From: Octopus sinensis
Taxonomy: Eukaryota
Assembly: GCF_006345805.1 (NCBI RefSeq)
Contig: NC_043011.1
Location: 17,744,464 to 17,808,463 of the forward strand
Length of the DNA: 64,000 bases
Reading direction: 5' to 3'
This document shows positions 2,926 through 64,000 of this stretch, one piece after another. The stretch's first letter is position 1; every line of letters starts with the position of its first letter. Below the pieces are notes generated by a model. That model did no database searches. It was not told where the DNA came from and worked only from the letters and a program-made list of their open reading frames with translations. The translations under genes and the position numbers were made by a program.

Positions 2926-2970
2926 TTTTTTGAGGCTCAAGACTTTTCATAAAATTATCGTATATATATA

Positions 2971-13152: not shown

Positions 13153-13528
13153 TTAGCACACCGGAGGAAATGTATAGCGGTATTTCGTCTGCCGCTAGGT
13201 TCTGAGTTCCAAATCCGCGGAGGTCGACTTTGCCTTTCATCCTTTCGGGGTCGAGCAAATAAGTTACGCGCTGGGGTCGATATAATCGACTTAATTCGTT
13301 TTTCTGTCCTTGTTTGTTCCCTCTGTGTTTAGCCCCTTGTGGGTAGTAAAGAAATAGCTATTTCGTCTGCTGTTACGTTCTGAGTTCGAATACCACCGGG
13401 GTCGAATTTGCTTGTCATCCTTTCGAAATAGAGAAATTAAGTAACGTTGAAACAGTGGGGTTGGTGTAATCGACTTACACACTCCCCTATAATTTCAAGC
13501 CCTCTGCTGATAGTAGAAAGGAATATTA
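13153..13528 (+). mobile_element. SINE family A, dimer
   Basis: gttctgagttc B-box-like core twice; junction aaagaaatag/ctatttcgtc at ~13357. Confidence 0.8.
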
Positions 13529-16985: not shown

Positions 16986-17156
16986 TAGGAATAATTACGC
17001 TGATAATTTTAGCCTGCATATCAAGACAAAAGGGCCCTTGCTACACTTGGAGTTCGGAGGACGCCAGGTACTAAGGCAGCTAAAATAAAGTTATAGTGAA
17101 AGGAAACCAGAAATGATGATGATGTTGATGATGATGATGATGATAATAATAATAAC

Positions 17157-32932: not shown

Positions 32933-33933
32933 AGCTGGTTTTTCAAGCTAAATGTTGGTTGCAGTAATTTCATGAATGAAAGCAAGAGCCTGAAATGTGT
33001 TGTAAAATGCTGAAGGGACACACATACAAAATAAATGCGATCGCTTATGATATTTAAATGAAAGCAAAAACGATGTTTTTGTAGTGATAGAGTTTCGGTT
33101 AGATACTACCATAGAAACCAATCTCTATCTTGCCTTGGTTGTTCACGGAATTTAAAGCTGACTGAACACAATGACAGTCGAACCAGATGACAGCAAACGC
33201 GTGTGTAATTAGCGTAAGATACTTATGTTAAACAATAAACTTTACAAATAGTTAAATTCTCCTCTAGCGGAAACTAAATTGAAACAATGATGAATAGAAA
33301 TACGTTAGTTATTGGCAAACACTTATTGATATCAATGGCAGAACAGAGGTCATTTCACAATACTGAAGATCTATATTTTCAAGCTACAGAAATGAAATAA
33401 GATACGCTTCTATATTCATACTATGTTTTTACCGAATATCTAATTCTAGGAACCGAAAAGAAATTTTCTCCGCTTAACTGCACATTTCTTTATCGAACAG
33501 TACCTGGGAGATTTGATCTTACCCTCTTCCATACCTCCCCACCAAACATAACAGTTGATGTAGAATATTTATCATTTAATAACTGCTTGAATCAGAGACA
33601 TCTAAATAATTCTCGGTTTCATGTTGAAATGACCGATTGTAGTATGCAATTGTACACACAAGACGTGTTAGTATGATATTCACCAGCAATTCTACACACA
33701 ACCATAATTTCTGCATTTTTAGGTGCAAGCAACAAACATATTTATTTCTATGTACATAAGTTCACATATACAAGTTTGCTCCAGTTATTTTCCTATAAAT
33801 ATGTGCCTGACAGAATGTTTGTATCTTTCTACTGTAATGAGTTAACCATATACATCTACACATACCCACTCGCGCGCACACTCACACACACATACGTACA
33901 CATTTGTCATTATTAATGTCATTGTTATAAAGT

Positions 33934-34167
33934 AAAGCCGGCGAGCTGGCTGCAACGTTAGCACGCCGGGCGAAGTGCTTAGCGGTATTTCGTCTGCCGT
34001 TACGTTCTGTGTTCAAATTCCGCCGAAGTCGACTTTGCCTTTCATCCTTTCGGGGTCGATAAATTAAGTACCAGTTACGCACTGGGATCGATGTCATCGA
34101 CTTAATCCATTTGTCTGTCCTTGTTTGTACCCTCTATGTTTAGCCCCTTGTGGGCAATAAAGAAATA
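33934..34167 (+). mobile_element. SINE family A, full-length
   Basis: Head aaagccggcgagctggc, B-box-like gttcaaattcc, tail gccccttgtgggcaataaagaaat. Confidence 0.9.
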
Positions 34168-34181
34168 ATATCCACTTTTTT

Positions 34182-34414
34182 AAAGGCGGCGAGCTGGCAG
34201 AATCGTTAGCACGTCGGGCGAAATGCTTAGCAATATTTCGTCTGCCGCTACGTTCTGAGTTCAAATTCCGCCCGGGTCGACTTTGCCTTTCATCCTTTCG
34301 GAGTCGATAAATTAAGTACCAGTTACGCACTGAGGTCGATGTAATCGACTTAATCCGTTTGTCTGTCCTTGTTTGTCCCCTCTGTGTTTAGCCCCTTGTG
34401 GGCAGTAAAGAAAT
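34182..34414 (+). mobile_element. SINE family A, full-length
   Basis: Same head, core and tail as 33934-34167. Confidence 0.9.
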
Positions 34415-34499
34415 ACATATACATCTACACCACCTACCCAAACGCGCGCGCCCACACTCACACATACATTTGTCATTAGTAATGTCATTATTATAAAGG

Positions 34500-40479: not shown

Positions 40480-41620
40480 AGTTTTGAAATATGGATTATT
40501 GCATGAGAGATGCAGCACGTGAGCTTAAGCGTAGAAGGGGAGGACGATTGCGCGAGGAACAACAGGAGGAAATAAGGAACACAAATCTCGTGAGGACAAG
40601 ACACAAAAGAAACGAAATAAATCAAGAGGAGACGGAGAGTATCCTACGGGATATGAGGGAAATAAATCATCAAAGGATGGAACAAATGAACCAAGACCAA
40701 AAGGAAGTGTATTTTCAAAATAAGAGAGAAAGAGATCAACAGATTCGAGAACACATAAGCCAAGAGCAAAGGCAGCTGTACTTAGCAAATATAAATAACA
40801 GAGCTCAATAAAGAAGGAAACATATGGACGAAAACGAAAGGCGGAATTACCTTCAAGATATGAGAAACAGGGTTCAAGAAAGAAGGAAGAATATGGTAGA
40901 AGCTAAAACATAGAATTATCTTATGACAGACAGAGCTCAAATAACAAGACAGAAGGTAATAAAAGAACAACAAAATTCTCAATTTACGGTTGCTGGGATG
41001 AACGTAGTATACCTGCACTGTCATGCAAGTAGATTTCCACTGAAAACACTTAATTGTTACCATAATGGTAAGGTTTCCTTGCCGAACCTACAAGAATGTC
41101 CTGACCAGTTGAAACATCTTTTGGAGAATAGTGACATTGAAGGAATGAACTTTAGGCAGAACATCAGACACTATTATACAATGTCTTCATTCGCCTCATT
41201 TGGAGCCAATGTTTCATTTCCTCCTGATCGTGGCCCATACTGTTTCTGCTTCCGAGGACGAGTCTATCATCACGCAAGCAACTTAAAGCCTGAAAATAAT
41301 GAACCTAGCAGGTATACTCAACGTTATATAGTTGATTCTAAAGAAGCCTTACAAACAAGAAGTGAAGTGCCTGAAAATATTAATTGCTTGCATTCAGCAA
41401 TGGAAAAGATTTCTTCAGTCATGCTGAATAATCCATATACTGCAGCATATTGAAATAGGTGCACTGTTGAACAAGAAGAAGAAAGAGCAGCCAGAGAAAA
41501 AGTTAATCCGGGGAAAGTAACTACGCATGTCATATCAGGCCCAGATGCCAGGAGACAGAATAAACCAGTTAATATTGAAATTGCAACGGTATTTTTAGTT
41601 ATATAAACACGCATCACCAC
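40480..41620 (+). pseudogene. Helitron RepHel N-terminal remnant
   Basis: GMNVVYLHCHASRF...NGKVSLPNL...LKHLL...FRQNIRHY...FASFGAN...GPYCF...VYH...YIVDS.EA...NNPY..AY, then D.RR.NKP...EIATVF: the conserved region upstream of the Helitron Rep domain. Stops are present; Rep and helicase are absent. Confidence 0.85.
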
Positions 41621-46700: not shown

Positions 46701-47289
46701 AATAATATACTATATATAATATATGAATCTAAGCACTTAACGCTCCTTCAACTGCTCTGCCTTAGTAGCAAAGAGTGTGATAAACTGACATCATATCTTT
46801 GTTACAACACATGTAAGAACAAATTTCAATTTAAATCTTGCTTATTAATGCAACGTATCTACAAGTATACGCAGCCATGATTTTTCTAAAATATTCTAGA
46901 ATTTTCCTTACATCTCAAAGAAATTTAAGAAAGTTTTTTAAAGAAACATTAGAAAACAACTAATTACAAATTGTAAGTCATGACAAAGGGAAAGCGAAGA
47001 ACAGGAAGTAGATTTTTCCATTTCATTTTCTTGTGTTTTAGTATTAATTTTATGTAATTATATTTAAATTAATCAATAAGGATGCCACCATAGTGCGAAA
47101 TGACGACAAAGAACAAAGCACCTCAACCTTATGAAAAAGAGGAAAATTATAATCAATAATGAAGAATGCGTATAAAAATCATTCATATATATCTAATATA
47201 TAATGCATTATATGCGTTTGTATGTGTGGCTGACTGCATAAATACATGCATTCATACATACACATTCACACACACATAAGCATATATAT

Positions 47290-47367
47290 ACATGCATACA
47301 TACATACATATATACACACACACACATATATATATATACATATATACATATATATATATATACATAC

Positions 47368-47398
<31 letters not shown>

Positions 47399-47419
47399 CA
47401 TACATATATATAGTATATG

Positions 47420-47476
<57 letters not shown>

Positions 47477-47479
47477 TAT

Positions 47480-47522
<43 letters not shown>

Positions 47523-47750
47523 ATATATATATGTATATATGTATATATATAATATATATGTATATATATATATTATATATGTATGTATATATATATGTAT
47601 ATATATATATATATGTATATATATTATATATATATATATACATATATATATATTATGTGTATATATATATATTATATATATATTTATATATTATATATAT
47701 GATATATATATGTATATATGTATATATATATATGTATATATGTATATATA

Positions 47751-47775
<25 letters not shown>
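47290..47775. repeat. Long interrupted (TA)n array
   Basis: Direct reading; further arrays at 47936-48315 and 50345-50860. Confidence 0.95.
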
Positions 47776-47781
<6 letters not shown>

Positions 47782-47935
47782 ATTAGAGACAAAACCACTA
47801 TTTTGCAAAACAAACAAGGAAAAGACTTAATCAATACATAAAATTTTAATAAATAGTCAGAAAAAACCGCCACTACAATTGTTTCTTGTCTTGATCGACA
47901 ATCTTCAGGTGGACTTCCAATAAGTCAGTTCAAAT
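47775..47935 (-). mobile_element. Solo terminal repeat (probable Penelope pLTR) carrying a hammerhead ribozyme, inside (TA)n
   Basis: Shares its terminus with 3666-3799 and contains the motif at 47870-47912. Confidence 0.75.
47870..47912 (-). ncRNA. Minimal type I hammerhead ribozyme
   Basis: Minus strand: ccac CUGAAGA uuguc gaucaa gacaa GAA ACAAUUGU A gugg. Stem I 4 bp, stem II 5 bp, palindromic stem III, GUA cleavage triplet. Confidence 0.85.
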
Positions 47936-47979
47936 TATGTATATATATATATATATGTATATATATATGTATGTATATA

Positions 47980-48067
<88 letters not shown>

Positions 48068-48132
48068 TATATTATATATATATGTATATATATTATATTA
48101 TATATATATATATAATATATATATATATATAT

Positions 48133-48170
<38 letters not shown>

Positions 48171-48211
48171 ATAATATATATATATATATAATATATTATA
48201 TATTATGTATG

Positions 48212-48274
<63 letters not shown>

Positions 48275-48315
48275 ATATATATATGTATATATATGTTATA
48301 TATATTATATATATA

Positions 48316-48720: not shown

Positions 48721-50347
48721 AGAGAGTATTAGTGCGTAAGATTGGTCTGGACGTGCGTATGTATGGGGTTGGTGTATGTATTAGTATGTATTAGTATGTA
48801 TTAGTACATATTGGTATGTATAGGTGTGTGTGTGTGTGTGTGAGAGTATAAGTGCCTATGCGGGGTCTGGACGTGTGTATGTATAGGGTTGGTGTAAGTA
48901 TTAGTATGTACTAGTATGTATTAGTACGTATTAGTATGTATTAGTTGGTGTGTGTATTAGTATGGCACATCATATGTGATGTGATGTGTAAAGTCATGTG
49001 GTGTAGTGAGAGAAGAGGGGGATGGGGAGAAGAGGGAGAGGGGGAGAAGAGGGGGAGGGGAGAATAGGGGGAGGGGGAGAAGAGGGGAGGAGAGAAGGGG
49101 AGGGGAAGAAGAGGGGAGGAGAAGGGGGAGAAGGAGAGGGTGGGGGGAAGGAAGGGGATGAGGGGGATGAAGGAGGAAAGAGGGAGAGGGGGGAGAGAGA
49201 GAAGGGGAGAGAGGGAGTGAGGGAGCAGAGGGAAGGGGAAGAGGGAGGGAGAAAGAGGGAAGAAGGGAAGGGGAGTAGGGGTGGGTGAAAGGATGAAGGA
49301 CTGAAGAAGTAGGGGTCGGGGGGGAGAAAGGATAGGTGAGGAGGGGGGTGATGTTAGATGAGGGGGGGGGAGAGTTGAGACCAAATGGCGTATAAGAGCG
49401 AAGAGAGAAGATTAATTCCTGTTCACGGCGCAAACGGGAATCCGGATGGCCTCTGTGTAAGGACAAACCGAACACAGATAGGTGTTGCAAGGAGTGACCG
49501 GTGGAGCGGAAATGGCGTGAGACCGGTGTGTCGTTCGCAAGGTGGATGTCACGAAGGTGTTCCGCGAACCGGTCAGCCAAGCGGCGTCCCGTTGTCCGAT
49601 GTACAAGGAATTGCAGAGAGAGCAAGGGATGCAATAGATAATATTGCTGGAGGTGCAGGTGAAGGAGTGGATGATGCGATAGGGTCGATGGTGGGTGCTA
49701 GTGAGGCGGGGGTGGTGTTGGAGAGGTAAGGGCAAGTGCGGCAACGTGGGCGGGAGCAGGGGAACGAGCCGGGTTGGGAGGTAGGGTCAGGGAAGGAGCT
49801 ATGGACCAAAAGGTCTCGAAGGTTGTGGGCTCGTTTGAAAGAGGGGAGGGGTCGGTTAGGGAAGAGGTGTGAAGTGGACGGGTCGGACTGGAGATGACGG
49901 AAAGCTCGAAGAATGGTGCGTTGGAGACGTAGGGTCGTGGGGTGGTAAGTGAGGGGAAAAGGGAGGCGGAGAGACTACAGGGCGGGTTCGGGGAGAGAGA
50001 GCAGATACACGGTCCACGGACCATGCTCTGGCAAGGGCGGTGTGGATAGTGGTGAGGGGGTATCCACGTAGGGTGAAGTGGTGAGCCATACGTTGAGACT
50101 GAGTCTCAAAGTCATGGTCGTCACTACAGAGCCTACGTAGACGGAGGAATTGGGAATAGGGGATGGAAAGCTTGGTGTGTTCTGGGTGGGAGGAAGAGAA
50201 GTTGAGGTATGAGTGTGAGTCTGTGTGTTTGTAGTGAATGGAGGTGGTAAGAGTGGAGTGAAGAATGCTAACCGAAATGTCGAGGAAGGAGACAGAGGTG
50301 TTGGAGATAGTGGAAGTGAAGTGGAGGGCTGGATGGAAATATTGGAC
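48316..50347 (-). mobile_element. 5'-truncated Penelope-like element (RT thumb, GIY-YIG, long 3' region), flanked by (TA)n on both sides
   Basis: [23 protein letters not shown]...[40 protein letters not shown]...LRGYP; CSRPRCRTCPY; FTCTSSNIIYCIPCSLCNSLYIGQ/TGRRLADRFAEH...RREQELIFSL...PFGLN. Few frameshifts. Confidence 0.93.
48411..48448 (-). ncRNA. Hammerhead-like motif with variant core CUGUUGA
   Basis: ucguu CUGUUGA a gagc guag gcuc GAA ACGU U aaaga. Confidence 0.6.
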
Positions 50348-50380
<33 letters not shown>

Positions 50381-50406
50381 ATATATATATATATATATAT
50401 GTTATA

Positions 50407-50437
<31 letters not shown>

Positions 50438-50444
50438 GCATGTA

Positions 50445-50475
<31 letters not shown>

Positions 50476-50510
50476 ATATATATATATAATATATATATAT
50501 ATATATGTAT

Positions 50511-50588
<78 letters not shown>

Positions 50589-50607
50589 ATATATGTATAT
50601 ATATATA

Positions 50608-50658
<51 letters not shown>

Positions 50659-50660
50659 TG

Positions 50661-50816
<156 letters not shown>

Positions 50817-51224
50817 TATATATTGTTATATTTTTATGTACATTTATAAATTGCAGGTTTGATGTACGCTGCAAAATTACATAGAGAGAAAAAAATTTTC
50901 AAATAGACAACATGGATGTAAACACATCAGTGTCATTCACCAGACGTCAGTTTAGTAGACAATAGAATTCATGTATTTCTGCGTCGTTACACTTCATCAA
51001 CTACATACTTGAAACCATCGATCATGCCGACTAAGTGCTGGTTACTCATTGCATTGAAATAGCAAATACTATATTTTCTGACGTGTGGATTCCTTTCTCA
51101 CACTCAGACGTACGTACGCGCGCACATACACACACACAGACATAAACGCACGCGTGCACACATTCGCGCGCGCGCGCACAAAATCACACTCTCACAAACA
51201 CATATATTCTTTTAATCTTTTCTT

Positions 51225-51440: not shown

Positions 51441-52335
51441 AAGTCATCGAGAATAGGATCAGCGCTGCCTATACTGCTTTCGTAAGGCAATCAAAATGAG
51501 TCTTGTGAAACCATGACCTCCTCATTTAAAGGAAAGTTACGGCATTCCGAGCTGTCATGTCTTCCACACTCCTTTACGGCTGTGAGACATTGTTATTGTA
51601 ACGATGGGACTTGAAGAAAATAGAACCTACGCAGCAGCACCGATTAACCTAATGATGAGAATTCGTCGGAGCGACTACACTCCGGATTGACCAGCAGCGA
51701 AGTCGCTGAGTCACAACACTGCTTCCACTAGTCAGTATACGTCATAGGTGGAGGCGCAATGACCCAGTGGTTAGGGCAGCGGACTCGCGTTCGTAGGATC
51801 GCGGTTTCGATTCCCAGACCGGGCGTTGTGAGTGTTTATTGAGCGAAAACACCTAAAAGCTCCACGAGGCTCCGGCAGGGGATGGTGGTGATCTCTGCTG
51901 TACTCTTTCACCACAACTTTTTCTCACTCTTACTTCCTGTTTCTGTTGTACCCGTATTTCAAAGGGCTGGCCTTGTCACTCTCTGTGTCACGCTGAATAT
52001 CCCCGAGAACTACGTTAAGGGTACACGTGTCTGTGGAGTGATCAGCCACTTGCACGTTAATTTCACGTGCAGGCTGTTCCGTTGATCGGATCAACCGGAA
52101 CCCTCGTCGTCGTAACCGACGGAGTGCTTCCAGTCCCAGTCCATACGTCATAGATATACCTCAAATGCGCCTCCTCCGTCATATCCTCTCTTCAGATTTG
52201 CCCGCAGACACCAGACCGTCAAGAATCCTCAAATTCCGTTTCCTTCCACGCTGATCTATTGCCCCAAAATGCCTAGGAGATAATCGCCAAGACAGCCCGA
52301 ATTGGTGGCATGTGATCGTCGAGGTAATAGTAATC
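51440..52335 (+). mobile_element. RTE-clade LINE 3' fragment interrupted by a SINE
   Basis: IENRISAAYTAF...FRAVMSSTLLYGCET...DLKKIE; after the SINE, PQMRLLRHILSSDLP..TRPS...DSPNWWHVIVE. Confidence 0.75.
51750..52142 (+). mobile_element. SINE family C (tRNA-derived), full-length with an 11-bp TSD
   Basis: A-box tgacccagtgg, B-box gtttcgattcc; TSD atacgtcatag at 51737-51747 and 52143-52153. Confidence 0.92.
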
Positions 52336-52663
52336 GACACGCGTCGTGTGTTGCTGAAAGTTTTTTGATTGCGGCTGTATGTGTCCGAGTGTATATTTAA
52401 GTGATACTTATAACCCATATAACTACAGTTTACCATGTTGAAGCTTCTGTTTATACATCTGCACCATTCAACAAACATATATAGATTTACGTAGTAATAA
52501 GATACCTGCTTATATGCATCACATTTATAACAATCAAACATATACATTCAAACGGACTTACATGTGCACCTGTCTACCTTGACACAGCATAAACGTACAA
52601 ACAACTTCGTAAATAAACTGTCAGTGAGGGCCTACACCACATGATCCATACATACATTCGACT

Positions 52664-52988
52664 GGAGGTGCAATGGCCCAGTGGTTAGGACAGCGGACTC
52701 GCGGTCGTAGGATCGCGGTTTCGATTCCCAGACCGGGCGTTGTGAGTGGTCCCTGCTGTACTCTTTCACCACAACTTTCTCTTACTTCCTGTTTCTGTTG
52801 TACCTGTATTTCAAAGGGCCGGCCTTGTCACTCACTTGTGTCACGCTGAATATCCCCGAGAACTACGTTAAGGGTACACGTATCTGTGGAGTGCTCAGCC
52901 ACTTACACGATAATTTTACGAGCAGGATGTTCCGTTGATCGGATCAACCGGAACCCTCGTCGTCATAACCAACGGAGTGCTTCCATCC
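52664..52988 (+). mobile_element. SINE family C with a ~55-bp internal deletion and an 11-bp TSD
   Basis: Same head and tail as 51750; TSD acatacattcg at 52650-52660 and 52989-52999. Confidence 0.9.
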
Positions 52989-53097
52989 ACATACATTCGG
53001 CAATATTTTTGTAAGTGGACTTTGTGACACTGAGTTTGCGGTGTCATTCATCCGACTAGCGACACTCTCAAAGTGATCTAGTAAAATTATATGCATA

Positions 53098-53140
53098 AAA
53101 TTGATGTGAAAGAGTACCACAGGGATCACCACCACCCTCT
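53098..53140 (-). mobile_element. Short SINE family C fragment at the satellite's left edge
   Basis: Reverse complement ggtggtggtgatccctgtggtactctttcac matches 51885-51915. Confidence 0.7.
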
Positions 53141-56100
53141 GGACGAAAACGAGGCTCTGGAACAAAAACGAGGCGATGGAACAAAAACGAGGCTTTGGAA
53201 CGAAAACGACGCTCTGGAACGAAAACGAGGCTCTGGAACGAAAACGAGGCTCTGGAACGAAAACGTACTCTGGAACGAAAACGAGGCTGTGGAACGGAAA
53301 CGAGACTCTAGAACGAAAACGAGGCTCTGGAACGAAAACGAGGCTCTGGGACGAAAACGAGGCTTTGGAACAATAACGAGGCTTTGGAACGAAAACAAGA
53401 CGTTGGAGCAAAAACGACGCTCTGGAACGAAAACGAGGCTTCGGAACGAAAACGAGGCTTTGGAATGAAAACGAGGCTTCGGAAGAAAACGAAGATTCGG
53501 AACGAAAACGAGGCTTCGGACCGACAACGAGGCTTCGAAACGAAAACGAGGCTTTGGAACGAAAACGAGGCGTTAGACGAAAACGAGGCTGTGGAACGAA
53601 AACGAGGCGTTAGACGAAAACGAGGCTCTGGAACGAAAACAAGGCTGTGGAACGAAAACGAGGCTCTGGAAGGAAAACGAGGCTTTGTAACGAAAACGAC
53701 GCTCTGGAACGAAAACGAGGCTCTGGAACGAAAACGACGCTATGGAACGAAAACGAGGCTCTGGAACGAAAACGAAGCTGTGGAACGAAAACGAGGCTCT
53801 GGAACGAATACGAGGCTCTTGAACGAATACGAGGCTCTGGAACGAAAACGAAGCTCTGGAACGAAAACGAGGCTCTGGAACGAACACGACACGCTCTCTG
53901 AAACGAAACAAGGCTCTGGAACGATAACGAGGCTCTGGAGCGAAAACGACGCTCTGGAACGAAAACGAGGCTCTGGAACGAAAACGAGGCTGTGGAACGA
54001 AAACGAGGCTCTGGAACGAATACGAGGCTCTGGAACGAAAACGAGGCTCTGGAATGAAAACGAGGCTTTGGAACGAAAACGAGACGTTGGAGCAAAAACG
54101 ACGCTCTGGAACGAATACGAGGCTCTGGAACGAAAACGAGGCTCTGGAACGAAAACGAGGCTCTAGAACGAAAACGAGGCTCTGGAACGAAAACGAGGCT
54201 CTGGGACGAAAACGAAGCTTTGGAACAATAACGAGGCTTTGGAACGAAAACAAGACGTTGAAGCAAAAACGACGCTCTGGAATGAAAACGAGGCTTCGGA
54301 ACGAAAACGAGGCTTCGGAATGGAAACGAGCCTTCGGAAAGAAAACGAAGATTCGGAATGAAAACGAGGCTTCGGACCGACAACGAGGCTTCGAAACGAA
54401 ATCGAGGCTTTGGAACGAAAACGAGGCTTAGACGAAAACGAGCTGTGGAACGAAAACGAGGCTCTGGAACGAAACCCAGGCTGTGGAACGAAAACGAGGC
54501 TCTGGAACGAAAACGAGGCTTTGTAACGAAAACGACGATCTGGAACGAAAACGAGGCTCTGGAACGAAAACGACGCTATGGAACGAAAACGCTCTGGCGA
54601 GGCTACTGGAACGAAAACGAACCGGTGTGGAACAACGAACAGGCTCTGGAACGAATACGAGGCTCTGAACGAATACGAGGCTCTGGACGAAAACGAGGCT
54701 CTGGAACGAAAACGAGGCTCTGGAACGAACCACGACCTCTGAAACGAAAACAAGGCTCTGGAACGATAACGAGGCTCTGGAGCGAAAACGAGGCTCTGGA
54801 ACGAAAACGAGGCTCTGGAACGAAAACAAGGCTGTGGAACGAAAACGAGGCTCTGGAACGAATACGAGGCTCTGGAACGAAAACGAGGCTCTGGAATGAA
54901 AACGAGGCTTTGGAACGAAAACGAGACGTTGGAGCAAAAACGACGCTCTGGAACGAATACGAGGCTCTGGAACGAAAACGAGGCTCTGGAACGAAAACGA
55001 GGCTCTGGAACGAAAACGAGGCTCTGGGACGAAAACGAAGCTTTGGAACAATAACGAGGCTTTGGAACGAAAACAAGACGTTGAAGCAAAAACGACGCTC
55101 TGGAATGAAAACGAGGCTTCGGAACGAAAACGAGGCTTCGGAATGGAAACGAGCCTTCGGAAAGAAAACGAAGATTCGGAATGAAAACGAGGCTTCGGAC
55201 CGACAACGAGGCTTCGAAACGAAATCGAGGCTTTGGAACGAAAACGAGGCGTTAGACGAAAACGAGGCTGTGGAACGAAAACGAGGCTCTGGAACGAAAA
55301 CAAGGCTGTGGAACGAAAACGAGGCTCTGGAACGAAAACGAGGCTTTGTAACGAAAACGACGATCTGGAACGAAAACGAGGCTCTGGAACGAAAACGACG
55401 CTATGGAACGAAAACGAGGCTCTGGAACGAAAACGAAGCTGTGGAACGAAAACGAGGCTCTGGAACGAATACGAGGCTCTTGAACGAATACGAGGCTCTG
55501 GAACGAAAACGAGGCTCTAAACGAAAACGAGGCTCTGGAACGAACACGACGCTCTGAAACGAAAACAAGGCTCTGGAACGAAAACGAGGCTCTGGAGCGA
55601 AAACGAGGCTCTGGAACGAAAACGAGGCTCTGGAACGAAAACGAGGCTGTGGAACGAAAACGAGGCTCTGGAACGAATACGAGGCTCTGGAACGAAAACG
55701 AGGCTCTGGAATGAAAGCGAGTCTTTGGAACGAAAACGAGACGTTGGAGCAGAACGAACACGAGGCTCTGGAACGAAAGCGAGGCTCTGGAACGAAAACG
55801 AGGCTGTGGAACGAAAACGAGGCTCTGGAACGAAAGCGAAGCTTTGGAACGAAAACGAGTCCTTGGAACGAAAACAAGACGTCGGATCAAAAACGACGCT
55901 CTGAATGGAAAACGAGGCGTCGCTTCGAACAAACGAACGACTTCGGAAAGGAACGGCTTCGGAAAGAAAACGAATTCAACGGATCGGAAAACGAGGCTTC
56001 GCGGAAAAACGAGGCTTCGGACGAAAACGAGCCGTTTGGAACGAAAACGAGGCGTTAGACGAAAAGAGGCTGTGGAACGAAAACGAGGCTCTGGACGAAA

Positions 56101-59100
56101 ACGAGGCTTTGGAACGAAAACGAGGCTCTTGAACGAAAACGAGGCTCTGGAACGAAAACGACGCTCTGGAACGAAACGAGGCTCTGGAACGAAAACGAAG
56201 CTGTGGAAAGAAAACGAGGCTCTGGAACGAATACGAGGCTCTTCAACGAATACGAGGCTGTGGAACGAAAACGAGGCCCTGGAACAAAAACGAGGCTCTG
56301 GAACGAACACGACGCTCTGAAACGAAAACAAGGCTCTGGAACGATAAAAGAGCTCTGGAGCGAAAACGAGGCTCTGAAACGTAAACAAGGCTCTGGAACG
56401 AATACGAGGCTCTTCAACGAATACGAGGCTCTGGAACGATAACGAGGATCTGGAGCGAAAACGAGGCTCTGGAACGAAAACGAGGCTCTGGAACGAAAAC
56501 GTGGCTGTAACGAAAACGAGGCTCTGGAACGAATACGAGGCTCTGGAACGAAAACGAGGCTCTGGAATGAAAACGAGACTTTGGAACGAAAACGAGACGT
56601 TGGAGCAAAAACGACGCTCTGGAACGAATACGAGGCTCTGGAACGAAAACGAGGCTCTGGAACGAAAACGAGGCTCTGGAAGGAAAACGAGTCTCTGGGA
56701 CGAAAACGAAGCTTTGGAACAATAACGAGGCTTTGGAACGAAAACAAGACGTTGAAGCAAAAACGACGCTCTGGAATGAAAACGAGGCTTCGGAACGAAA
56801 ACGAGGCTTCGGAATGGAAACGAGCCTTCGGAAAGAAAACGAAGATTCGGAACGAAAACGAGGCTTCGGACCGACAACGAGGCTTCGAAACGAAATCGAG
56901 GCTTTGGAACGAAAACGAGGCGTTAGACGAAAACGAGGCTGTGAAACGAAAACGAGGCTCGGGAACGAAAACAAGGCTGTGGAACGAAAACGAGGCTCTG
57001 GAACGAAAACGAGGCTTTGTAACGAAAACGACGCTCTGGAACGAAAACGAGGCTCTGGAACGAAAACGACGCTATGGAACGAAAACTAGGCTCTGGAACG
57101 AAAACGAAGCTGTGGAACGAAAACGAGGCTCTGGAACGAATACGAGGCTCTTGAACGAATACGAGGCTCTGGAACGAAAACGAGGCTCTGGAACGAAAAC
57201 GAGGCTCTGGAACGAACACGACGCTCTGAAACGAAAACAAGGCTCTGGAACGATAACGAGGCTCTGGAGCGAAAACGAGGCTCTGGAACGAAAACGAGGC
57301 TCTGGAACGAAAACGAGGCTGTGGAACGAAAACGAGGCTCTGGAACGAATACGAGGCTCTGGAACGAAAACGAGGCTCTGGAATGAAAACGAGGCTTTGG
57401 AACGAAAACGAGACGTTGGAGCAAAAACGACGCTCTGGAACGAATACGAGGCTCTGGAACGAAAACGAGGCTCTGGAACGAAAACGAGGCTCTGGAACGA
57501 AAACGAGGCTCTGGGACGAAAACGAAGCTTTGGAACATTAACGAGGCTTTGGAACGAAAACAAGACGTTGGATCAAAAACGACGTTCTGGAATGGAAACG
57601 AGGCTTCGGAACGAAAACGAGGCTTCGGAATGGAAACGAGCCTTCGGAAAGAAAACGAAGATTGGGAACGAAAACGAGGCTTCGGAACGACCCGCACGAC
57701 GAGGCTTCGAAACGAAATCGAGGCTTTGGAACGAAAACGAGGCGTTAGACGAAACGAGGCTGTGAAACGAAAACGAGGCTCGGGAACGAAAACAAGGCTG
57801 TGGAACGAAAACGACGAGTGGAACGAAAACGAGGCTTTGTAACGAAAACGACGCTCTGGAACGAAAACGAGGCTCGGAACGAAAACGACGCTATGGAACG
57901 AAAACTAGGCTCTGGAACGAAAACGAAGCTGTGGAACGAAAACGCTGGCTCTGGAACGAATACGAGGCTCTTGAACGAATACGAGGCTCTGGAACGAAAA
58001 CGAGGCTCTGGAACGAAAACGAGGCTCTGGAACGAACACGACGCTCTGAAACGTAAACGAGGCTCTGGAACGAATACGAGGCTCTACAACGAATACGAGG
58101 CTCTGGAACGATAACGAGGATCTGGAGCGAAAACGAGGCTCTGGAACGAAAACGAGGCTCTGGAACGAAAACGAGGCTGTGGAACGAAAACGAGGCACTG
58201 GAACGAATACGAGGCTCTGGAACGAAAACGAGGCTCTGGAATGAAAACGAGGCTTTGGAACGAAAACGAGACGTTGGAGCAAAAACGACGCTCTGGAACG
58301 AATACGAGGCTCTGGAACGAAAACGAGGCTCTGGAACGAAAACGAGGCTCTGGAAGGAAAACGAGTCTCTGGGACGAAAACGAAGCTTTGGGACGAAAAC
58401 GAAGCTTTGGAACAATAACGAGGCTTTGGAACGAAAACAAGACGTTGAAGCAAAAACGACGCTCTGGAATGAAAACGAGGCTTCGGAACGAAAACGAGGC
58501 TTCGGAATGGAAACGAGCCTTCGGAAAGAAAACGAAGATTCGGAATGAAAACGAGGCTTCGGACCGACAACGAGGCTTCGAAACGAAATCGAGGCTTTGG
58601 AACGAAAACGAGGCGTTAGACGAAAACGAGGCTGTGGAACGAAAACGAGGCTCTGGAACGAAAACAAGGCTGTGGAACGAAAACGAGGCTCTGGAACGAA
58701 AACGAGGCTATGTAACGAAAACGACGCTCTGGAACGAAAACGAGGCTCTGGAACGAAAACGACGCTATGGAACGAAAACGAGGCTCTGGAACGAAAACGA
58801 AGCTGTGGAACGAAAACGAGGCTCTGGAACGAATACGAGGCTCTTGAACGAATACGAGGCTCTGGAACGAAAACGAGGCTCTGGAACGAAAACGAGGCTC
58901 TGGAACGAACACGACGCTCTGAAACGAAAACAAGGCTCTGGAACGATAACGAGGCTCTGGAGCGAAAACGAGGCTCTGGAACGAAAACGAGGCTCTGGAA
59001 CGAAAACGAGGCTGTGGAACGAAAACGAGGCTCTGGAACGAATACGAGGCTCTGGAACGAAAACGAGGCTCTGGAATGAAAACGAGGCTTTGGAACGAAA

Positions 59101-62100
59101 ACGAGACGTTGGAGCAAAAACGACGCTCTGGACGAATACGAGCTCTGGAACGAAAACGAGCTCTGGAACGAAAACGAGGCTCTGGAACGAAACGAGGCTC
59201 TGGGACGAAAACGAAGCTTTGGAACAATAACGAGGCTTTGGAACGAAAACAAGACGTTGGATCAAAAACGACGCTCTTGAATGAAAACGAGGCTTCGGAA
59301 CGAAAACGAGGCTTCGGAATGGAAACGAGCCTTCGGAAAGAAAACGAAGATTCGGAACGAAAACGAGGCTTCGGACCGACAACGAGGCTTCGAAACGAAA
59401 TCGAGGCTTTGGAACGAAAACGAGGCGTTAGACGAAAACGAGGCTGTGGAACGAAAACGAGGCTCTGGAACGAAAACGAGGCTTTGGAACGAAAACGAGG
59501 CTCTTGAACGAAAACGAGGCTCTGGAACGAAAACGACGCTCTGGAACGAAAACGAGGCTCTGGAACGAAAACGAAGCTGTGGAAAGAAAACGAGGCTCTG
59601 GAACGAATACGAGGCTCTTCAACGAATACGAGGCTGTGGAACGAAAACGAGGCCCTGGAACAAAAACGAGGCTCTGGAACGAACACGACGCTCTGAAACG
59701 AAAACAAGGCTCTGGAACGATAACGAGGCTCTGGAGCGAAAACGAGGCTCTGAAACGTAAACGAGGCTCTGGAACGAATACGAGGCTCTTCAACGAATAC
59801 GAGGCTGTGGAGCAAAAACGACGCTCTGGAACGAAAAGAGGCTCTGGAACGAAAACGACGCTCTGGAACGAACACGACGCTCTGAAACGAAAACAAGGCT
59901 CTGGAACGAAAACGAGGCTCTGGAACGTAAACGAGGCTCTGGAACGAAAGCGTGGTTCTGCAACGAAAACGAGGCTCCAGAACGAAAACGAGGCTCTGGA
60001 ACGGAAACGAGGCTGTGGAACGAAAACGAGGCTCTGGAACGAATACGACGTTCTCGAACGAATACGAGGCTCTGGAGCGAAAACGACGCTCTGGAACGAA
60101 AACGAGGCTCTGGAATGAAAACGAGGCTTTGGAACGAAAACGAGACGTTGGAGCAAAAACGACGCTCTGGAACGAATACGAGGCTCTGGAACGAAAACGA
60201 GGCTCTGGAACGAAAACGAGGCTCTGGAACGAAAACGAGGCTCTGGGACGAAAACGAAGCTTTGGAACATTAACGAGGCTTTGGAACGAAAACAAGACGT
60301 TGGATCAAAAACGACGCTCTGGAATGAAAACGAGGCTTCGGAACGAAAACGAGTCTTCGGAATGGAAACGAGCCTTCGGAAAGAAAACGAAGATTCGGAA
60401 CGAAAACGAGGCTTCGGACCGACAACGAGGCTTCGAAACGAAATCGAGGCTTTGGAACGAAAACGAGGCGTTAGACGAAAACGAGGCTGTGGAACGAAAA
60501 CGAGGCTCTGGAACGAAAACGAGGCTTTGGAACGAAAACGAGGCTCTTCAATGAAAACGAGGCTCTGGAACGAAAACGACGCTCTGGAACGAAAACGAGG
60601 CTCTGGAACGAAAACGAAGCTGTGGAAAGAAAACGAGGCTCTGGAACGAATACGAGGCTCTTCAACGAATACGAGGCTGTGGAACGAAAACGAGGCCCTG
60701 GAACAAAAACGAGGCTCTGGAACGAACACGACGCTCTGAAACAAAAACAAGGCTCTGGAACGATAACGAGGCTCTGGAGCGAAAACGAGGCTCTGAAACG
60801 TAAACGAGGCTCTGGAACGAATACGAGGCTCTACAACGAATACGAGGCTCTGGAACGATAACGAGGATCTGGAGCGAAAACGAGGCTCTGGAACGAAAAC
60901 GAGGCTCTGGAACGAAAACGAGGATGTGGAACGAAAATGAGGCTCTGGAACGAATACGAGGCTCTGGAATGAAAACGAGGCTTTGGAACGAAAACGAGAC
61001 GTTGGAGCAAAAACGACGCTCTGGAACGAATACGAGGCTCTGGAACGAAAACGAGGCTCTGGAACGAAAACGAGGCTCTGGAAGGAAAACGAGTCTCTGG
61101 GACGAAAACGAGCTTTGGGACGAAAACGAAGCTTTGGAACAATAACGAGGCTTTGGAACGAAAACAAGACGTTGAAGCAAAAACGACGCTCTGGAATGAA
61201 AACGAGGCTTCGGAACGAAAACGAGGCTTCGGAATGGAAACGAGCCTTCGGAAGAAAACGAAGATTCGGAATGAAAACGAGGCTTCGGACCGACAACGAG
61301 GCTTCGAAACGAAATCGAGGCTTTGGAACGAAAACGAGGCGTTAGACGAAAACGAGGCTGTGGAACGAAAACGAGGCTCTGGAACGAAAACAAGGCTGTG
61401 GAACGAAAACGAGGCTCTGGAACGAAAACGAGGCTTTGTAACGAAAACGACGCTCTGGAACGAAAACGAGGCTCTGGAACGAAAACGACGCTATGGAACG
61501 AAAACGAGGCTCTGGAACGAAAACGAAGCTGTGGAACGAAAACGAGGCTCTGGAACGAATACGAGGCTCTTGAACGAATACGAGGCTCTGGAACGAAAAC
61601 GAGGCTCTGGAACGAAAACGAGGCTCTGGAACGAACGAACACGCTCTGAAACGAAAACAAGGCTCTGGAACGATAACGAGGCTCTGGAGCGAAAACGAGG
61701 CTCTGGAACGAAAACGAGGCTCTGGAACGAAAACGAGGCTGTGGAACGAAAACGAGGCTCTGGAACGAATACGAGGCTCTGGAACGAAAACGAGGCTCTG
61801 GAATGAAAACGAGGCTTTGGAACGAAAACGAGACGTTGGAGCAAAAACGACGCTCTGGAACGAATACGAGGCTCTGGAACGAAAACGAGGCTCTGGAACG
61901 AAAACGAGGCTCTGGAACGAAAACGAGGCTCTGGGACGAAAACGAAGCTTTGGAACAATAACGAGGCTTTGGAACGAAAACAAGACGTTGGATCAAAAAC
62001 GACGCTCTTGAATGAAAACGAGGCTTCGGAACGAAAACGAGGCTTCGGAATGGAAACGAGCCTTCGGAAAGAAAACGAAGATTCGGAACGAAAACGAGGC

Positions 62101-62625
62101 TTCGGACCGACAACGAGGCTTCCAAACGAAATCGAGGCTTTGGAACGAAAACGAGGCGTTAGACGAAAACGAGGCTGTGGAACGAAAACGAGGCTCTGAA
62201 ACGAAAACGAGGCTTTGGAACGAAAACGAGGCTCTTGAACGAAAACGAGGCTCTGGAACGAAAACGACGCTCTGGAACGAAAACGAGGCTCTGGAACGAA
62301 AACGAAGCTGTGGAAAGAAAACGAGGCTCTGGAACGAATACGAGGCTCTTCTTCAACGAATACGAGGCTGTGGAACGAAAACGAGGCCCTGAACAAAAAC
62401 GAGGCTCTGGAACGAACACGAAGCTCTGAAACGAAAACAAGGCTCTGGAACGATAACGAGGCTCTGGAGCGAAAACGAGGCTCTGAAACGTAAACGAGGC
62501 TCTGGAACGAATACGAGGCTCTTCAACGAATACGAGGCTGTGGAGCAAAAACGACGCTCTGGAACGAAAAGAGGCTCTGGAACGAAAACGACGCTCTGGA
62601 ACGTAAACGAGGCTCTGGAACGAAA
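53137..62625. repeat. ~9.5-kb tandem satellite, 19-bp monomer GGAACGAAAACGAGGCTCT (~500 copies) with higher-order repeats
   Basis: Monomer read directly. The variant marker gaagattcgg recurs at 53491, 54347, 55170, ~55972, 56841, 57657, 58534, 59346, 60389, 61260 and 62077. Confidence 0.97.
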
Positions 62626-62735
62626 GGTCGGGCCCAGGCCAGACTCCCCGAGGATCGCCGCCAAGTACCGATGGTCGACACTATCAAATGCCTTAGACTG
62701 GTCTAAATGTAGCAGAACCCCCCCCCCCTGCGCCA
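62626..62735 (-). mobile_element. Tx1/L1-clade RT fragment abutting the satellite
   Basis: GAGGGVLLHLDQSKAFDSVDHRYLAAILGESGLGPTFR (LDxxKAFDxVxH RT motif). Confidence 0.75.
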
Positions 62736-62742
62736 GAAAAAC

Positions 62743-62913
62743 GGATTAAGTTGAATATATCGACTCCAGTGCGTAACTGGTACTTATTTAATCGACCCCG
62801 AAAAGATGAAAGGCGAAGTCGACCTCGGCGGAATTTGAACTCAGAACGTAACGGCAGATGAAATACGGCTACGCATTCCGCCCGGCGTACTAACGTTTCT
62901 GCCAGCTCGTGCC
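62743..62913 (-). mobile_element. SINE family A
   Basis: gtcgacctcggcggaatttgaactcagaacgtaacggcag...ttctgccagctcg. Confidence 0.85.
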
Positions 62914-64000
62914 TTTTATTTTCATGCATATTGTGCTGTTTTTATTTTCTGTTTTCAAAGAGAAACTCTTTGGAGTGCGTTCCTACTTTTTAACATGAAA
63001 ATAAAAGGGGAAACTCATTCCGTGTTAAAGCAATCCTAGAATGTATTACTTGTGTAAAGCGAAGGGTTAATGTCTTTTTAAAAATTGTATACACGATATG
63101 CGATTTTCCTGTGAGTACAAGTTTAAGATATGTTACCATTCTCTATTTTATAGCAGCAATTATAACAGTACTAGAAATGAAACTGAGAGTAAATATAACA
63201 GGCAGATGCGATACGATTCCTTACAACAGAATAAACAAGCAATATAAGAAAAAATGACAGACACTTATCTGTCAACAGTTAACTACGTATGCGTGTTTAA
63301 ATCATTTATTTTGATTGTCGAATATCAGTTATTTGCAAATGCAATATATATATGATTGCTGGACACCATCTCGATACATTTCGTCTTCGCCTTTCGTATG
63401 ATTAAAACTATATATATATATACACACACACACAATCTCACTCACAAACACATGGTCATAAACAAACACACGCATATATACATATGTATCAATGTGCGCG
63501 TGTGTGTGTACTTATATATATATATATATATATATATATACTTTCATACATTCTCTCATGTCTCATTTATGAATCTTTTTCTCTGTATACACCTTCGTGT
63601 CTTCCTAACTCTTCCTAACCAATCTTTATTCATATTTTTATATCGTTTATATTACCACCATATCCATCTTTACAACACCAACGCATTTTTTCTGTCTCTT
63701 TCTTTTTCTTTCTTTCTTTCTTTCTTTTCTCTGTCACTGAATCCTTGTCAAAGTTCACATCTCATTTCGTTTTCGTTATTCCTCAGTAATCAGCTCACAA
63801 GTTTGCAGGATGAGTTTCGTTCCGTCGTGTGCTACATTAATCAGTTCTTATAACAAAAGTGAATAACATTGTTGGGGCGAATACTAGTCAGAAACTGATA
63901 GGGAATATTTGGTCGACAAACCTACTGCAATTGGCACTCGCATTTTATTCAATCTCATTGTACTAATTAGGAAAAGAAGTGAAAACTCTATTGAATAATA

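What the first reader, a model, noticed from the sequence alone, without database searches (positions are those of the whole stretch)
53137..62625. 9.5-kb satellite with three-tier organisation: 19 bp, ~0.81-0.88 kb and ~1.69 kb
The marker gaagattcgg is spaced 856, 823, ~802, ~869, 816, 877, 812, 1043, 871 and 817 bp, largely alternating short and long. The rarer variant ggccct occurs at 56275, 59651, 60694 and 62385 (spacings 3376, 1043, 1691). Ordered variant monomers inside larger units resemble centromeric higher-order repeats, but with a very short monomer. It has two CpGs per monomer in a CpG-poor, AT-rich context and a strong purine strand bias. I do not recognise the family.
Basis: partly seen in the sequence, partly recalled or inferred. 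Interest (0 to 1): 0.7.

Follow-up and report, generated by a model that had tools for sequence, protein, structure and literature searches.

The report
Octopus 19-bp satellite with higher-order repeats
A 9.5-kb non-coding block in an octopus-like genome is about 500 head-to-tail copies of a 19-base unit arranged in larger ~0.83-kb units, an ordinary kind of satellite DNA from an apparently undescribed family, with no evidence here that it is a centromere.

Summary
The array is real and sits exactly at 53137-62625. It has about 500 copies of AACGAAAACGAGGCTCTGG, all on the + strand, and none elsewhere in the window. A second tier is strongly supported. There are 11 units of 43-55 monomers (0.82-1.04 kb) that are 89-99.9% identical to each other, while monomers are only about 82% alike. 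Shuffling the monomer order never reproduces this signal. The units fall into two subtypes, A and B, in the order A A A B A A/B A B B A B.

The claimed 1.69-kb third tier is not a regular period. Identity at a lag of two units and the A/B alternation are both no better than random unit order (p about 0.3). The strongest long-range signal is a single 1.63-kb block duplicated 2.73 kb away at 99.2% identity.

The host is an octopod, because the dispersed repeats in the window match Octopus bimaculoides and O. vulgaris. The array lies in gene-poor, transposon-rich DNA between two SINE copies. It is not coding, has no Rfam match, and had no relatives in any searchable collection or paper.

The best reading is a young, homogenised minisatellite-type satellite that grows by slippage and unequal exchange. 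A centromere role, genome-wide abundance and assembly accuracy cannot be tested here.

The parts
53137..62625 (+). Whole tandem array: about 500 monomers of 19 bp, consensus AACGAAAACGAGGCTCTGG. GC 50%, purine 67%, CpG observed/expected 1.8.
   Evidence: TRF; wrap-around alignment giving 502 monomers; pattern search, 420 hits against 0 expected; composition
53137..54052 (+). HOR unit U1, type A, 49 monomers. It is the edge unit and the most diverged A copy (96.3-96.8% to the other A units).
54053..54894 (+). HOR unit U2, type A, 45 monomers. It contains a cluster of 12 small indels at 54428-54737 but only 6 substitutions relative to U3.
54895..55709 (+). HOR unit U3, type A, 43 monomers (98.8-99.4% to U5, U7 and U10).
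55710..56565 (+). HOR unit U4, type B, 45 monomers. Its first half (about 55752-56095) is degenerate, with many substitutions and small indels.
56566..57381 (+). HOR unit U5, type A, 43 monomers.
57382..58239 (+). HOR unit U6, an A/B hybrid of 45 monomers. Most of it is A-like, with a B-like tail (monomer string ...sAUaLr).
58240..59074 (+). HOR unit U7, type A, 44 monomers. It is 99.88% identical to U10.
59075..60113 (+). HOR unit U8, type B, 55 monomers (the long unit behind the 1043-bp marker spacing). It is 99.1% identical to U11.
60114..60967 (+). HOR unit U9, type B, 45 monomers.
60968..61801 (+). HOR unit U10, type A, 44 monomers.
61802..62625 (+). HOR unit U11, type B, 44 monomers. It is cut short where the array ends.
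58240..59866 (+). Source or copy of the most recent block duplication: 86 monomers, 99.2% identical to 60968-62599, offset 144 monomers (2.73 kb).
60968..62599 (+). Partner of the 58240-59866 block.
53097..53141 (-). Left junction: a ~45-bp fragment of the tRNA-like SINE, in inverted orientation, directly abutting the first monomer.
   Evidence: BLAST of the flank against the window: 82% over 45 bp, E = 9e-7; alignment A1; the same segment in an O. bimaculoides copy of the SINE
52663..52985 (+). tRNA-like SINE copy 150 bp upstream of the array. A second copy lies at 51749-52132. An O. bimaculoides copy is 93% identical to the 51749 copy.
62626..62733 (.). Right junction: 108 bp of GC-rich sequence with no other copy in the window or in the two octopus loci fetched.
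62734..62916 (-). Copy of a second SINE-like dispersed repeat. Other copies lie at about 12000-12540, 13153-13477 and 33942-34415, and in O. vulgaris locus L002.

Best explanation
This is a non-coding tandem array in an octopod genome. It is minisatellite-sized in its monomer (19 bp) and satellite-like in its organisation.

Inferred history:
- A 19-bp motif was first amplified by replication slippage.
- Its copies diverged to about 82% identity.
- A block of about 43 diverged monomers then became the unit of unequal sister-chromatid or homologue exchange and gene conversion. Whole ~0.82-kb units were copied and homogenised to 98.5-99.9%.
- Two unit subtypes arose. They share the first ~21 monomers and differ in the second half.
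- Further out-of-register exchanges produced a hybrid unit, gains and losses of whole monomers (19, 57 bp), and a recent ~1.6-kb block duplication at a 2.7-kb offset.

Shown directly: the anatomy and the identity hierarchy. Inferred from the established models of satellite evolution: the mechanism. The array most likely has no sequence-specific cellular function at this locus. It behaves as neutral or selfish repetitive DNA embedded in transposon-rich intergenic sequence.
For: - Tandem structure and coordinates.
- Identity hierarchy: monomer against monomer 82.3% on average and 84% for neighbours. Unit against unit is 89-99.9%, with A units 96.3-99.9% (98.5-99.9% without edge unit U1) and B units 94.9-99.1%.
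- HOR signal far beyond shuffled monomer order: 0.876 and 0.862 against a maximum of 0.836.
- Monomer-register alignment of units shows the same ordered variants in all 11 units, a shared first half and subtype-specific second halves.
- Differences between units include whole-monomer indels of 19 and 57 bp. One 86-monomer block is duplicated at 99.2% identity.
- The edge unit U1 is the most diverged A copy, as expected when homogenisation is weaker at array ends.
- No transposon interrupts 9.5 kb, although SINE copies lie within about 150 bp of each end. This fits a young or rapidly turned-over array.
- Not coding: 13-51 stop codons in every frame. No protein relatives for + or - strand ORFs. 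The exhaustive search gave only weak hits, 21-49% identical, to translated unrelated short repeats from fish, shark and anonymous contigs.
- No Rfam family and no tRNA.
- Octopod host: a Helitron-like ORF matches O. bimaculoides and O. vulgaris proteins, and SINE and Helitron repeats are shared with loci from both genomes.
Against: - The mechanism is inferred from pattern only. No population, read-level or cross-species data were available.
- Genome-wide copy number is unknown, so 'locus-limited and functionless' is a default rather than a result.
- The array is formally CpG-island-like (GC 50%, CpG observed/expected 1.8), and its CpG sites show no excess of transitions. This could reflect protection from methylation or binding by a factor rather than youth.
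- Clusters of 1-3 bp indels show that part of the sequence may be assembly noise, so fine details of unit lengths may be wrong.
Confidence: 0.7

Rival explanations
1. The array is a peripheral or assembly-collapsed piece of the (peri)centromeric satellite of this octopus chromosome. The HOR would reflect centromere-type homogenisation, and the family would recruit centromeric or heterochromatin proteins.
For: - HOR organisation with near-identical units.
- Gene-poor, repeat-rich surroundings with no convincing host gene in 64 kb.
- Indel-noisy patches suggest a region that is hard to assemble.
- The searched literature holds no described octopus centromere repeat to contradict this.
Against: - The array is only 9.5 kb, with ordinary non-satellite DNA on both sides (53 kb to the left, 1.4 kb to the right) and no second array in the window.
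- No CENP-B-box-like motif.
- HORs are not specific to centromeres.
- Nothing places this window on a chromosome.
Confidence: 0.1
2. The array is the internal tandem-repeat region of a transposable element, spread with it, and expanded locally. Candidates are a Helitron/Helentron-type element, as in oysters, or a SINE-derived satellite, as in a limpet.
For: - Mollusc precedents: oyster satellites sit mostly inside Helitron-superfamily elements (PMC8268682, PMC10048060), and a limpet satellite derives from a SINE (PMC11121367).
- A Helitron-like fragment lies at about 40541-41594.
- The left edge of the array abuts an inverted SINE fragment.
- The SINE contains GCGAAAAC...ACGAGGCTCCGG, which looks like a split monomer.
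Against: - The monomer-to-SINE similarity is not significant: 85 of 1000 and 349 of 1000 shuffled monomers score as well.
- The Helitron fragment is 12 kb away.
- The immediate flanks, apart from the ~45-bp SINE fragment, have no other copy in the window or in the two Helitron-bearing octopus loci, and those loci contain no 19-mer.
- No terminal structures or transposon ORFs adjoin the array.
Confidence: 0.1
3. The higher-order pattern, or the number and order of units, is an assembly artefact of a long-read assembly.
For: - Tight clusters of 1-3 bp indels with few substitutions at 54428-54737, 55752-56095 and 59132-59190 look like unpolished consensus errors.
- Units U7 and U10 differ by one substitution, so a spurious duplication of about 2.7 kb is conceivable.
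Against: - An assembler cannot invent 43 ordered variant monomers that recur in the same order in 11 units with graded divergence (89-99.9%), a hybrid unit and two subtypes.
- Simple collapse or expansion would change the copy number of units, not create the HOR.
Confidence: 0.07
4. The array is an exon, or a whole gene, for a protein with a 19-residue repeat (NENEALERKRGSGTKTRLW on the + strand).
For: The consensus monomer has no stop codon in any of the six frames, so ORFs of up to 399 aa (+) and 622 aa (-) exist.
Against: - Every frame is broken 13-51 times by stops that are fixed at set positions in the HOR.
- Indels that are not multiples of three are frequent.
- No homologue was found among 5.8 billion protein clusters or 1.84 billion representatives, beyond chance matches to other translated short repeats.
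- Both strands are equally 'open', which is a property of the repeat and not of a gene.
Confidence: 0.02

Closest known systems
Human satellites 2 and 3 and DYZ1 (very short monomers arranged in kb-scale higher-order units)
   Same: A very short basic repeat whose diverged copies form ordered, kb-scale higher-order units that are homogenised as blocks. They are non-coding and strand-asymmetric. This rests on my own knowledge of these families, with PMC4022460 and PMC11305138 as references for HSat2/3 structure.
   Different: The human families have 5-bp-derived monomers, Mb-scale arrays and a pericentromeric location. Here the monomer is 19 bp, the array is 9.5 kb, the genomic location and abundance are unknown, and there is no sequence similarity.
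Primate alpha-satellite HORs
   Same: Units are far more alike than the monomers within them (here 89-99.9% against 82%). Subtypes, hybrid units and block duplications arise from unequal exchange.
   Different: Alpha satellite has a 171-bp, nucleosome-sized monomer, 2-34 monomers per HOR, Mb-scale arrays, a CENP-B box and CENP-A binding. Here the monomer is 19 bp, there are 43-55 monomers per unit, no such box is present, and there is no evidence of centromere function.
Classical GC-rich minisatellites (VNTRs)
   Same: The unit length falls in the 10-60 bp range and the array in the kb range. It shows purine/pyrimidine strand asymmetry (67% purine) and is much richer in GC and CpG than its surroundings. 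Interspersed variant repeats are present.
   Different: Minisatellite variant repeats are usually interspersed without a strict long-period order. Here the order recurs with a period of 43-45 monomers. Hypervariability between individuals is untested.
Mollusc satellites: oyster satellitome and limpet PcH-Sat
   Same: The host phylum is the same. Arrays are short, lie outside obvious heterochromatin blocks, and are embedded among or next to transposons (PMC8268682, PMC10048060, PMC11121367).
   Different: Those families have monomers of roughly 100-200 bp or more and demonstrable transposon parentage (Helitron/Helentron, Nin-SINE). Here the monomer is 19 bp and the test for SINE parentage failed. 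I found no cephalopod satellite described in the searched literature.

Membership tests
Satellite DNA with higher-order repeat organisation | Head-to-tail tandem monomers in one orientation | tested here: met
   TRF period 19, 499.7 copies. The listed matches are all on the + strand, and no rotation occurs outside the array on either strand.
Satellite DNA with higher-order repeat organisation | Multi-monomer units much more similar to each other than the monomers within a unit | tested here: met
   Units 89-99.9% identical against monomers 82%. Monomer-order shuffles never reach the observed lag identity.
Satellite DNA with higher-order repeat organisation | A further regular tier (dimer of units, about 1.69 kb) | tested here: not met
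   Unit lag-2 identity is 95.61% against 95.26 +/- 0.68 for random unit order (p = 0.30). A/B alternation has p = 0.26.
Satellite DNA with higher-order repeat organisation | High genomic abundance, or long arrays at several loci | not testable with these tools
   No eukaryotic genome or read collection can be searched by DNA here. There were no hits in metagenome or prokaryote collections.
Functional centromeric satellite | Association with CENH3/CENP-A chromatin at the primary constriction | not testable with these tools
   This needs chromatin profiling or FISH.
Functional centromeric satellite | Long uninterrupted array (typically 100 kb to Mb) dominating the region | tested here: not met
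   The array is 9.5 kb and is bounded by SINEs and unique DNA on both sides within the window. Assembly collapse cannot be excluded.
Functional centromeric satellite | CENP-B-box-like motif (defining only for some mammalian families) | tested here: not met
   No match to TTCG....A..CGGG on either strand.
Minisatellite / VNTR | Repeat unit about 10-60 bp, array 0.5-30 kb, GC-rich with strand asymmetry | tested here: met
   19 bp unit, 9,489 bp array, GC 50% against 34.7% in the rest of the window, purine 67%.
Minisatellite / VNTR | Length and variant-order polymorphism between individuals | not testable with these tools
   Only one haplotype sequence is available.
Transposon-borne tandem repeat (Helitron/Helentron type) | Array lies between the termini of a recognisable element, and the flanks recur at other loci | tested here: inconclusive
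   The flanks 52986-53096 and 62626-62733 have no other copy in the window or in loci L001 and L002. No genome-wide search was possible.
SINE-derived satellite | Monomer homologous to a segment of the parent SINE | tested here: not met
   The best local alignment of the monomer to the SINE is matched by 8.5% (window copy) and 35% (O. bimaculoides copy) of shuffled monomers.
Protein-coding tandem repeat | One long open frame, homologues, and indels in multiples of three | tested here: not met
   13-51 stops per frame, no homologues, and frequent 1-2 bp indels.

The most novel reading that the evidence does not exclude
The 19-bp family could be the (peri)centromeric satellite of octopus chromosomes, with this 9.5-kb piece being an edge or a collapsed remnant. 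That would make it the first sequence-defined cephalopod centromere repeat, with higher-order units of about 43 monomers built from an unusually short, CpG-rich monomer that stays unmethylated.
Probability: 0.07. Interest if true: 0.6.

Novelty: new member of a known kind. Interest (0 to 1): 0.27.

Why it matters
Cephalopod tandem-repeat DNA is almost undescribed. None of the full-text searches found a cephalopod satellite catalogue or this monomer. A clean example of a short-monomer HOR gives three things:

- A probe-sized sequence (a 19-mer) for cytogenetic mapping in octopus.
- A test case for how higher-order units arise from minisatellite-sized repeats.
- A practical warning for annotators. 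The consensus has no stop codon in any frame and yields spurious ORFs of up to 622 aa. The array also shows patches that look like assembly noise.

If it proved to be abundant or centromeric it would matter considerably more. As a single 9.5-kb locus it is an ordinary, if tidy, piece of repetitive DNA.

Tried and rejected
- Simple base-lag autocorrelation failed because indels blur it beyond about 300 bp. I replaced it with a monomer-register analysis.
- Rfam and tRNA scans of the window found nothing.
- Protein-level search for relatives of the array: the word-indexed search with a + strand ORF and a - strand ORF found nothing.
- The exhaustive representative search gave 43 weak hits. The ones I inspected are translations of unrelated short tandem repeats, or singletons from fish, shark or anonymous contigs. 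I rejected them as relatives.
- Exact-ORF look-ups of three array ORFs and one Helitron-like ORF found nothing on record.
- DNA pattern scans of metagenome contigs (two patterns) and prokaryote genomes gave 0 hits.
- Literature searches for eight sub-strings of the monomer on both strands, and for the SINE sequences, returned only unrelated primers.
- Topic searches on octopus or cephalopod satellites and centromeres found nothing relevant. The 2026 O. vulgaris repeat paper does not mention satellites.
- A Pfam scan of six flanking ORFs gave no family.
- SINE origin of the monomer was attractive by eye (GCGAAAAC...ACGAGGCTCCGG in the SINE) but is not significant.
- Association with a Helitron: the two octopus loci that carry the related Helitron-like gene contain no 19-mer.
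- An intermediate tier inside the HOR: no peak at lags 3-40.
- Hairpin or other single-strand structure is weak: -8 kcal/mol per 76 nt on the + strand (z = -2.3) and none on the - strand.
- CpG decay as a methylation footprint: the transition rate at CpG sites (0.053) equals that at other sites (0.052).
- No telomeric arrays occur in the window, only isolated TTAGGG dimers.
Full report
**1. What is there**

TRF finds a single array at 53137-62625 with period 19, 499.7 copies, 83% matches and consensus CTCTGGAACGAAAACGAGG. These are exactly the coordinates in the finding. A wrap-around dynamic-programming alignment to the rotated consensus AACGAAAACGAGGCTCTGG cuts it into 502 monomers. Of these, 101 are identical to the consensus, and there are 123 distinct monomer sequences.

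The consensus with up to three mismatches occurs 420 times, against 0 expected by chance. The matches listed are all on the + strand. No rotation of the monomer occurs anywhere outside the array on either strand.

The array is 50% GC, 67% purine on the + strand, and has 10.9 CpG per 100 bp (observed/expected 1.8; 2.05 per monomer). The rest of the window is 34.7% GC with a CpG observed/expected ratio of 0.81. The context is AT-rich but only mildly CpG-depleted.

**2. The markers**

The exact string GAAGATTCGG occurs nine times. Allowing one mismatch in its whole monomer adds the copy at 57648, and a degenerate copy lies near 55963. GGCCCT is at 56275, 59651, 60694 and 62385 as stated, with one unrelated copy at 17033.

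**3. The second tier is real**

Mean identity between monomers is 82.3% over all lags and 84% for neighbours. It rises to 86.2% at a lag of 43 monomers, about 85% at lags 44-46, and 87.6% at lag 89. After shuffling the order of the same monomers 300 times, the maximum over all lags averages 83.0% (sd 0.16) and never exceeds 83.6%.

Writing each monomer variant as a letter shows the same string of about 43 ordered variants recurring eleven times. I cut the array at the recurring 'q-i-b' monomers into units U1-U11:

- Unit lengths are 43-45 monomers (815-858 bp), except U1 (49 monomers, 916 bp) and U8 (55 monomers, 1039 bp).
- Pairwise identity of aligned unit bases is 89-99.9%.
- Type A comprises U1, U2, U3, U5, U7 and U10. 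Without U1 these are 98.5-99.9% identical to each other; U1 is 96.3-96.8% identical to the rest.
- Type B comprises U4, U8, U9 and U11, which are 94.9-99.1% identical to each other.
- U6 is a hybrid. It is A-like for most of its length, with a B-like tail.
- A and B share the first ~21 monomers and differ in the second half. There B carries extra monomers, including the GGCCCT variant.

**4. The third tier is not a regular period**

Three results argue against a regular period:

- Mean unit identity at unit lags 1, 2 and 3 is 95.25, 95.61 and 95.66%. The lag-2 value is reached by 30% of random unit orders.
- The number of A/B transitions (7 of 10) is reached by 26% of random orders.
- Within the supposed dimers the A halves are 98.8-99.9% alike, but the B halves only 92.7-99.1%. 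That is not what amplification of a dimer unit would give.

The strongest long-range signal is one event. Region 58240-59866 (86 monomers) is 99.2% identical to 60968-62599, at an offset of 144 monomers, or 2.73 kb. The array is best described as two tiers plus an irregular mosaic. No intermediate tier exists inside the unit.

**5. Signs of process**

Differences between units include gains or losses of whole monomers (19 bp, 57 bp) as well as point changes. These are what slippage and out-of-register exchange produce. The leftmost unit is the most diverged A copy, and the array ends on the right in the middle of a B unit.

No transposon interrupts the 9.5 kb, although SINE copies lie within about 150 bp of each end. 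SINEs make up 11.6% of the O. vulgaris genome (PMC13282606).

CpG sites carry no more transitions than other sites: 0.053 against 0.052 per site per monomer. Some variants create new CpGs. There is therefore no footprint of methylation-driven decay.

These features fit a young or actively homogenised array. As a rough inference only, I used the calibration implied in PMC13282606 (Jukes-Cantor distance 0.065 for about 18 My). On that scale the 0.1-1.5% divergence between A units corresponds to an order of 0.2-2 My. This ignores gene conversion and the unknown species.

**6. Sequence quality**

Three patches carry many 1-3 bp indels:

- 54428-54737 has 12 small indels and 6 substitutions relative to U3.
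- About 55752-56095 has many indels together with many substitutions.
- 59132-59190 has four single-base deletions relative to both U9 and U11.

In the first and third patches substitutions are few. That pattern is typical of unpolished long-read consensus in repeats. It could also be real local degeneration. It does not affect the existence of the HOR, but exact unit lengths and the unit count need read support.

**7. Surroundings and host**

The window has no Rfam or tRNA hit and no convincing host gene. Its longer ORFs are microsatellite translations or transposon fragments, and six of them gave no Pfam family.

A Helitron-like ORF at 40923-41453 matches an uncharacterised O. bimaculoides protein (68% identity over 40% of the ORF). 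It also matches an O. vulgaris protein that UniRef labels as containing a Helitron helicase-like domain (89% over 20%).

The two genomic loci encoding those proteins come from GCA_001194135.2 and GCA_951406725.2. They share SINE and Helitron fragments with the window at 77-93% identity, but no synteny and no 19-mer. The window therefore comes from an octopod. The species cannot be fixed.

On the left, a tRNA-like SINE copy (52663-52985; a second copy lies at 51749-52132) is followed by about 110 bp of unique sequence. Then comes a ~45-bp inverted fragment of the same SINE (53097-53141) that runs directly into the first monomer. On the right, 108 bp of GC-rich unique sequence separate the array from a copy of a second SINE-like repeat at 62734-62916.

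**8. Origin from the SINE?**

The full-length SINE contains GCGAAAAC, then about 14 bases, then ACGAGGCTCCGG. By eye this looks like a split monomer, and it lies next to the segment found inverted at the array edge. In a gapped local alignment, 8.5% of shuffled monomers score as well against the window copy and 35% against the O. bimaculoides copy. I therefore do not claim this origin.

**9. Not coding, not a known RNA, no relatives found**

The consensus has no stop in any of the six frames, which is why ORFs of up to 399 aa (+) and 622 aa (-) appear. Even so, every frame has 13-51 stops at fixed HOR positions.

- Searches of 5.8 billion protein clusters with one ORF from each strand found nothing.
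- An exhaustive HMMER search of 1.84 billion representatives gave only 43 weak hits, 21-49% identical. The ones I inspected are translations of other short tandem repeats from unrelated sources.
- Exact look-ups of three array ORFs found nothing.
- Metagenome and prokaryote DNA scans found nothing.
- Full-text searches for eight sub-strings of the monomer returned only unrelated primers.
- Topic searches found no cephalopod satellite description.

Repbase and Dfam, and the octopus assemblies themselves, could not be searched by DNA. 'Undescribed' therefore means undescribed in what I could reach.

**10. Interpretation**

The anatomy is that of a satellite with higher-order repeats, built on a minisatellite-sized monomer. 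The standard explanation is slippage first, then unequal exchange and gene conversion acting on a multi-monomer register. It accounts for every feature seen:

- the identity hierarchy;
- the two subtypes and the hybrid unit;
- whole-monomer indels;
- the diverged edge unit;
- the recent block duplication.

I give this reading 0.7.

Short monomers in kb-scale higher-order units are well precedented in human satellites 2 and 3 and DYZ1 (own knowledge; PMC4022460, PMC11305138). The form is therefore not new. Short arrays outside heterochromatin and near transposons are the rule in the best-studied mollusc, the Pacific oyster (PMC8268682, PMC10048060).

The centromere reading (0.1), a transposon-borne origin (0.1), an assembly artefact affecting unit number (0.07) and a coding repeat (0.02) remain as rivals. 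The first three need the whole genome, reads or cytology to settle.

**11. Verdict**

The 'three-tier' and 'centromere-like' readings are overstated. This is a new member of a known kind: a tidy, probably young, HOR-structured 19-bp satellite in an octopus genome. It has modest interest unless genome-wide data show it to be abundant or centromeric.

Noticed in passing
window 11999-12485 and 33933-34420: The second SINE-like repeat, the family that also flanks the array at 62734-62916, is itself present as short tandem arrays: 2.6 copies of a 185-bp unit and 2.0 copies of a 248-bp unit. This may be an early step of a SINE turning into a tandem repeat.
   Followed up: partly
window 49010-49275: A purine-only GA/GGGA-rich tract of about 270 bp, with the window's strongest GC skew (0.64 in 48-50 kb). 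It lies inside or next to ORFs at 48957-49744 (-) that contain a YIGQ motif. From memory this recalls the GIY-YIG nuclease of Penelope-like elements, but the one of these ORFs that was scanned (48957-49634) gave no Pfam family.
   Followed up: no
window 47282-48315 and 50348-50823: Very long (AT)n microsatellites: about 1 kb (530 repeats, 75% matches) and about 0.48 kb (243 repeats). Many further (AT)n, (ATA)n and (CATA)n tracts occur throughout the window.
   Followed up: no
window 40541-41594: A Helitron-like fragment. The ORF 40923-41453 matches O. bimaculoides LOC128247385 and an O. vulgaris protein labelled as containing a Helitron helicase-like domain. The DNA is 85% identical over 744 bp to O. 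vulgaris locus L002. This gives the taxonomic placement of the window.
   Followed up: yes
window 51835-51887 compared with 52748: The two neighbouring copies of the tRNA-like SINE differ by a ~53-bp segment. It is present in the 51749 copy and in the O. bimaculoides copy, but absent from the copy next to the array. The 3' part of this segment, together with the SINE sequence just after it, is what is found inverted at the array's left edge. This could be coincidence or a rearrangement linked to the birth of the array.
   Followed up: partly
window 53137-62625, both strands: The 19-bp consensus is free of stop codons in all six frames. The array therefore yields dozens of overlapping spurious ORFs of up to 622 aa with 19-residue periodicity. 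This is a trap for ORF-based gene callers.
   Followed up: yes
window 13654 and 32818: Isolated interstitial TTAGGG dimers, one on each strand. There is no telomeric array in the window.
   Followed up: no
window 2512-2952: An ORF whose sequence, from memory, resembles the reverse-transcriptase region of a retroelement. It gave no Pfam family at E <= 0.01.
   Followed up: no
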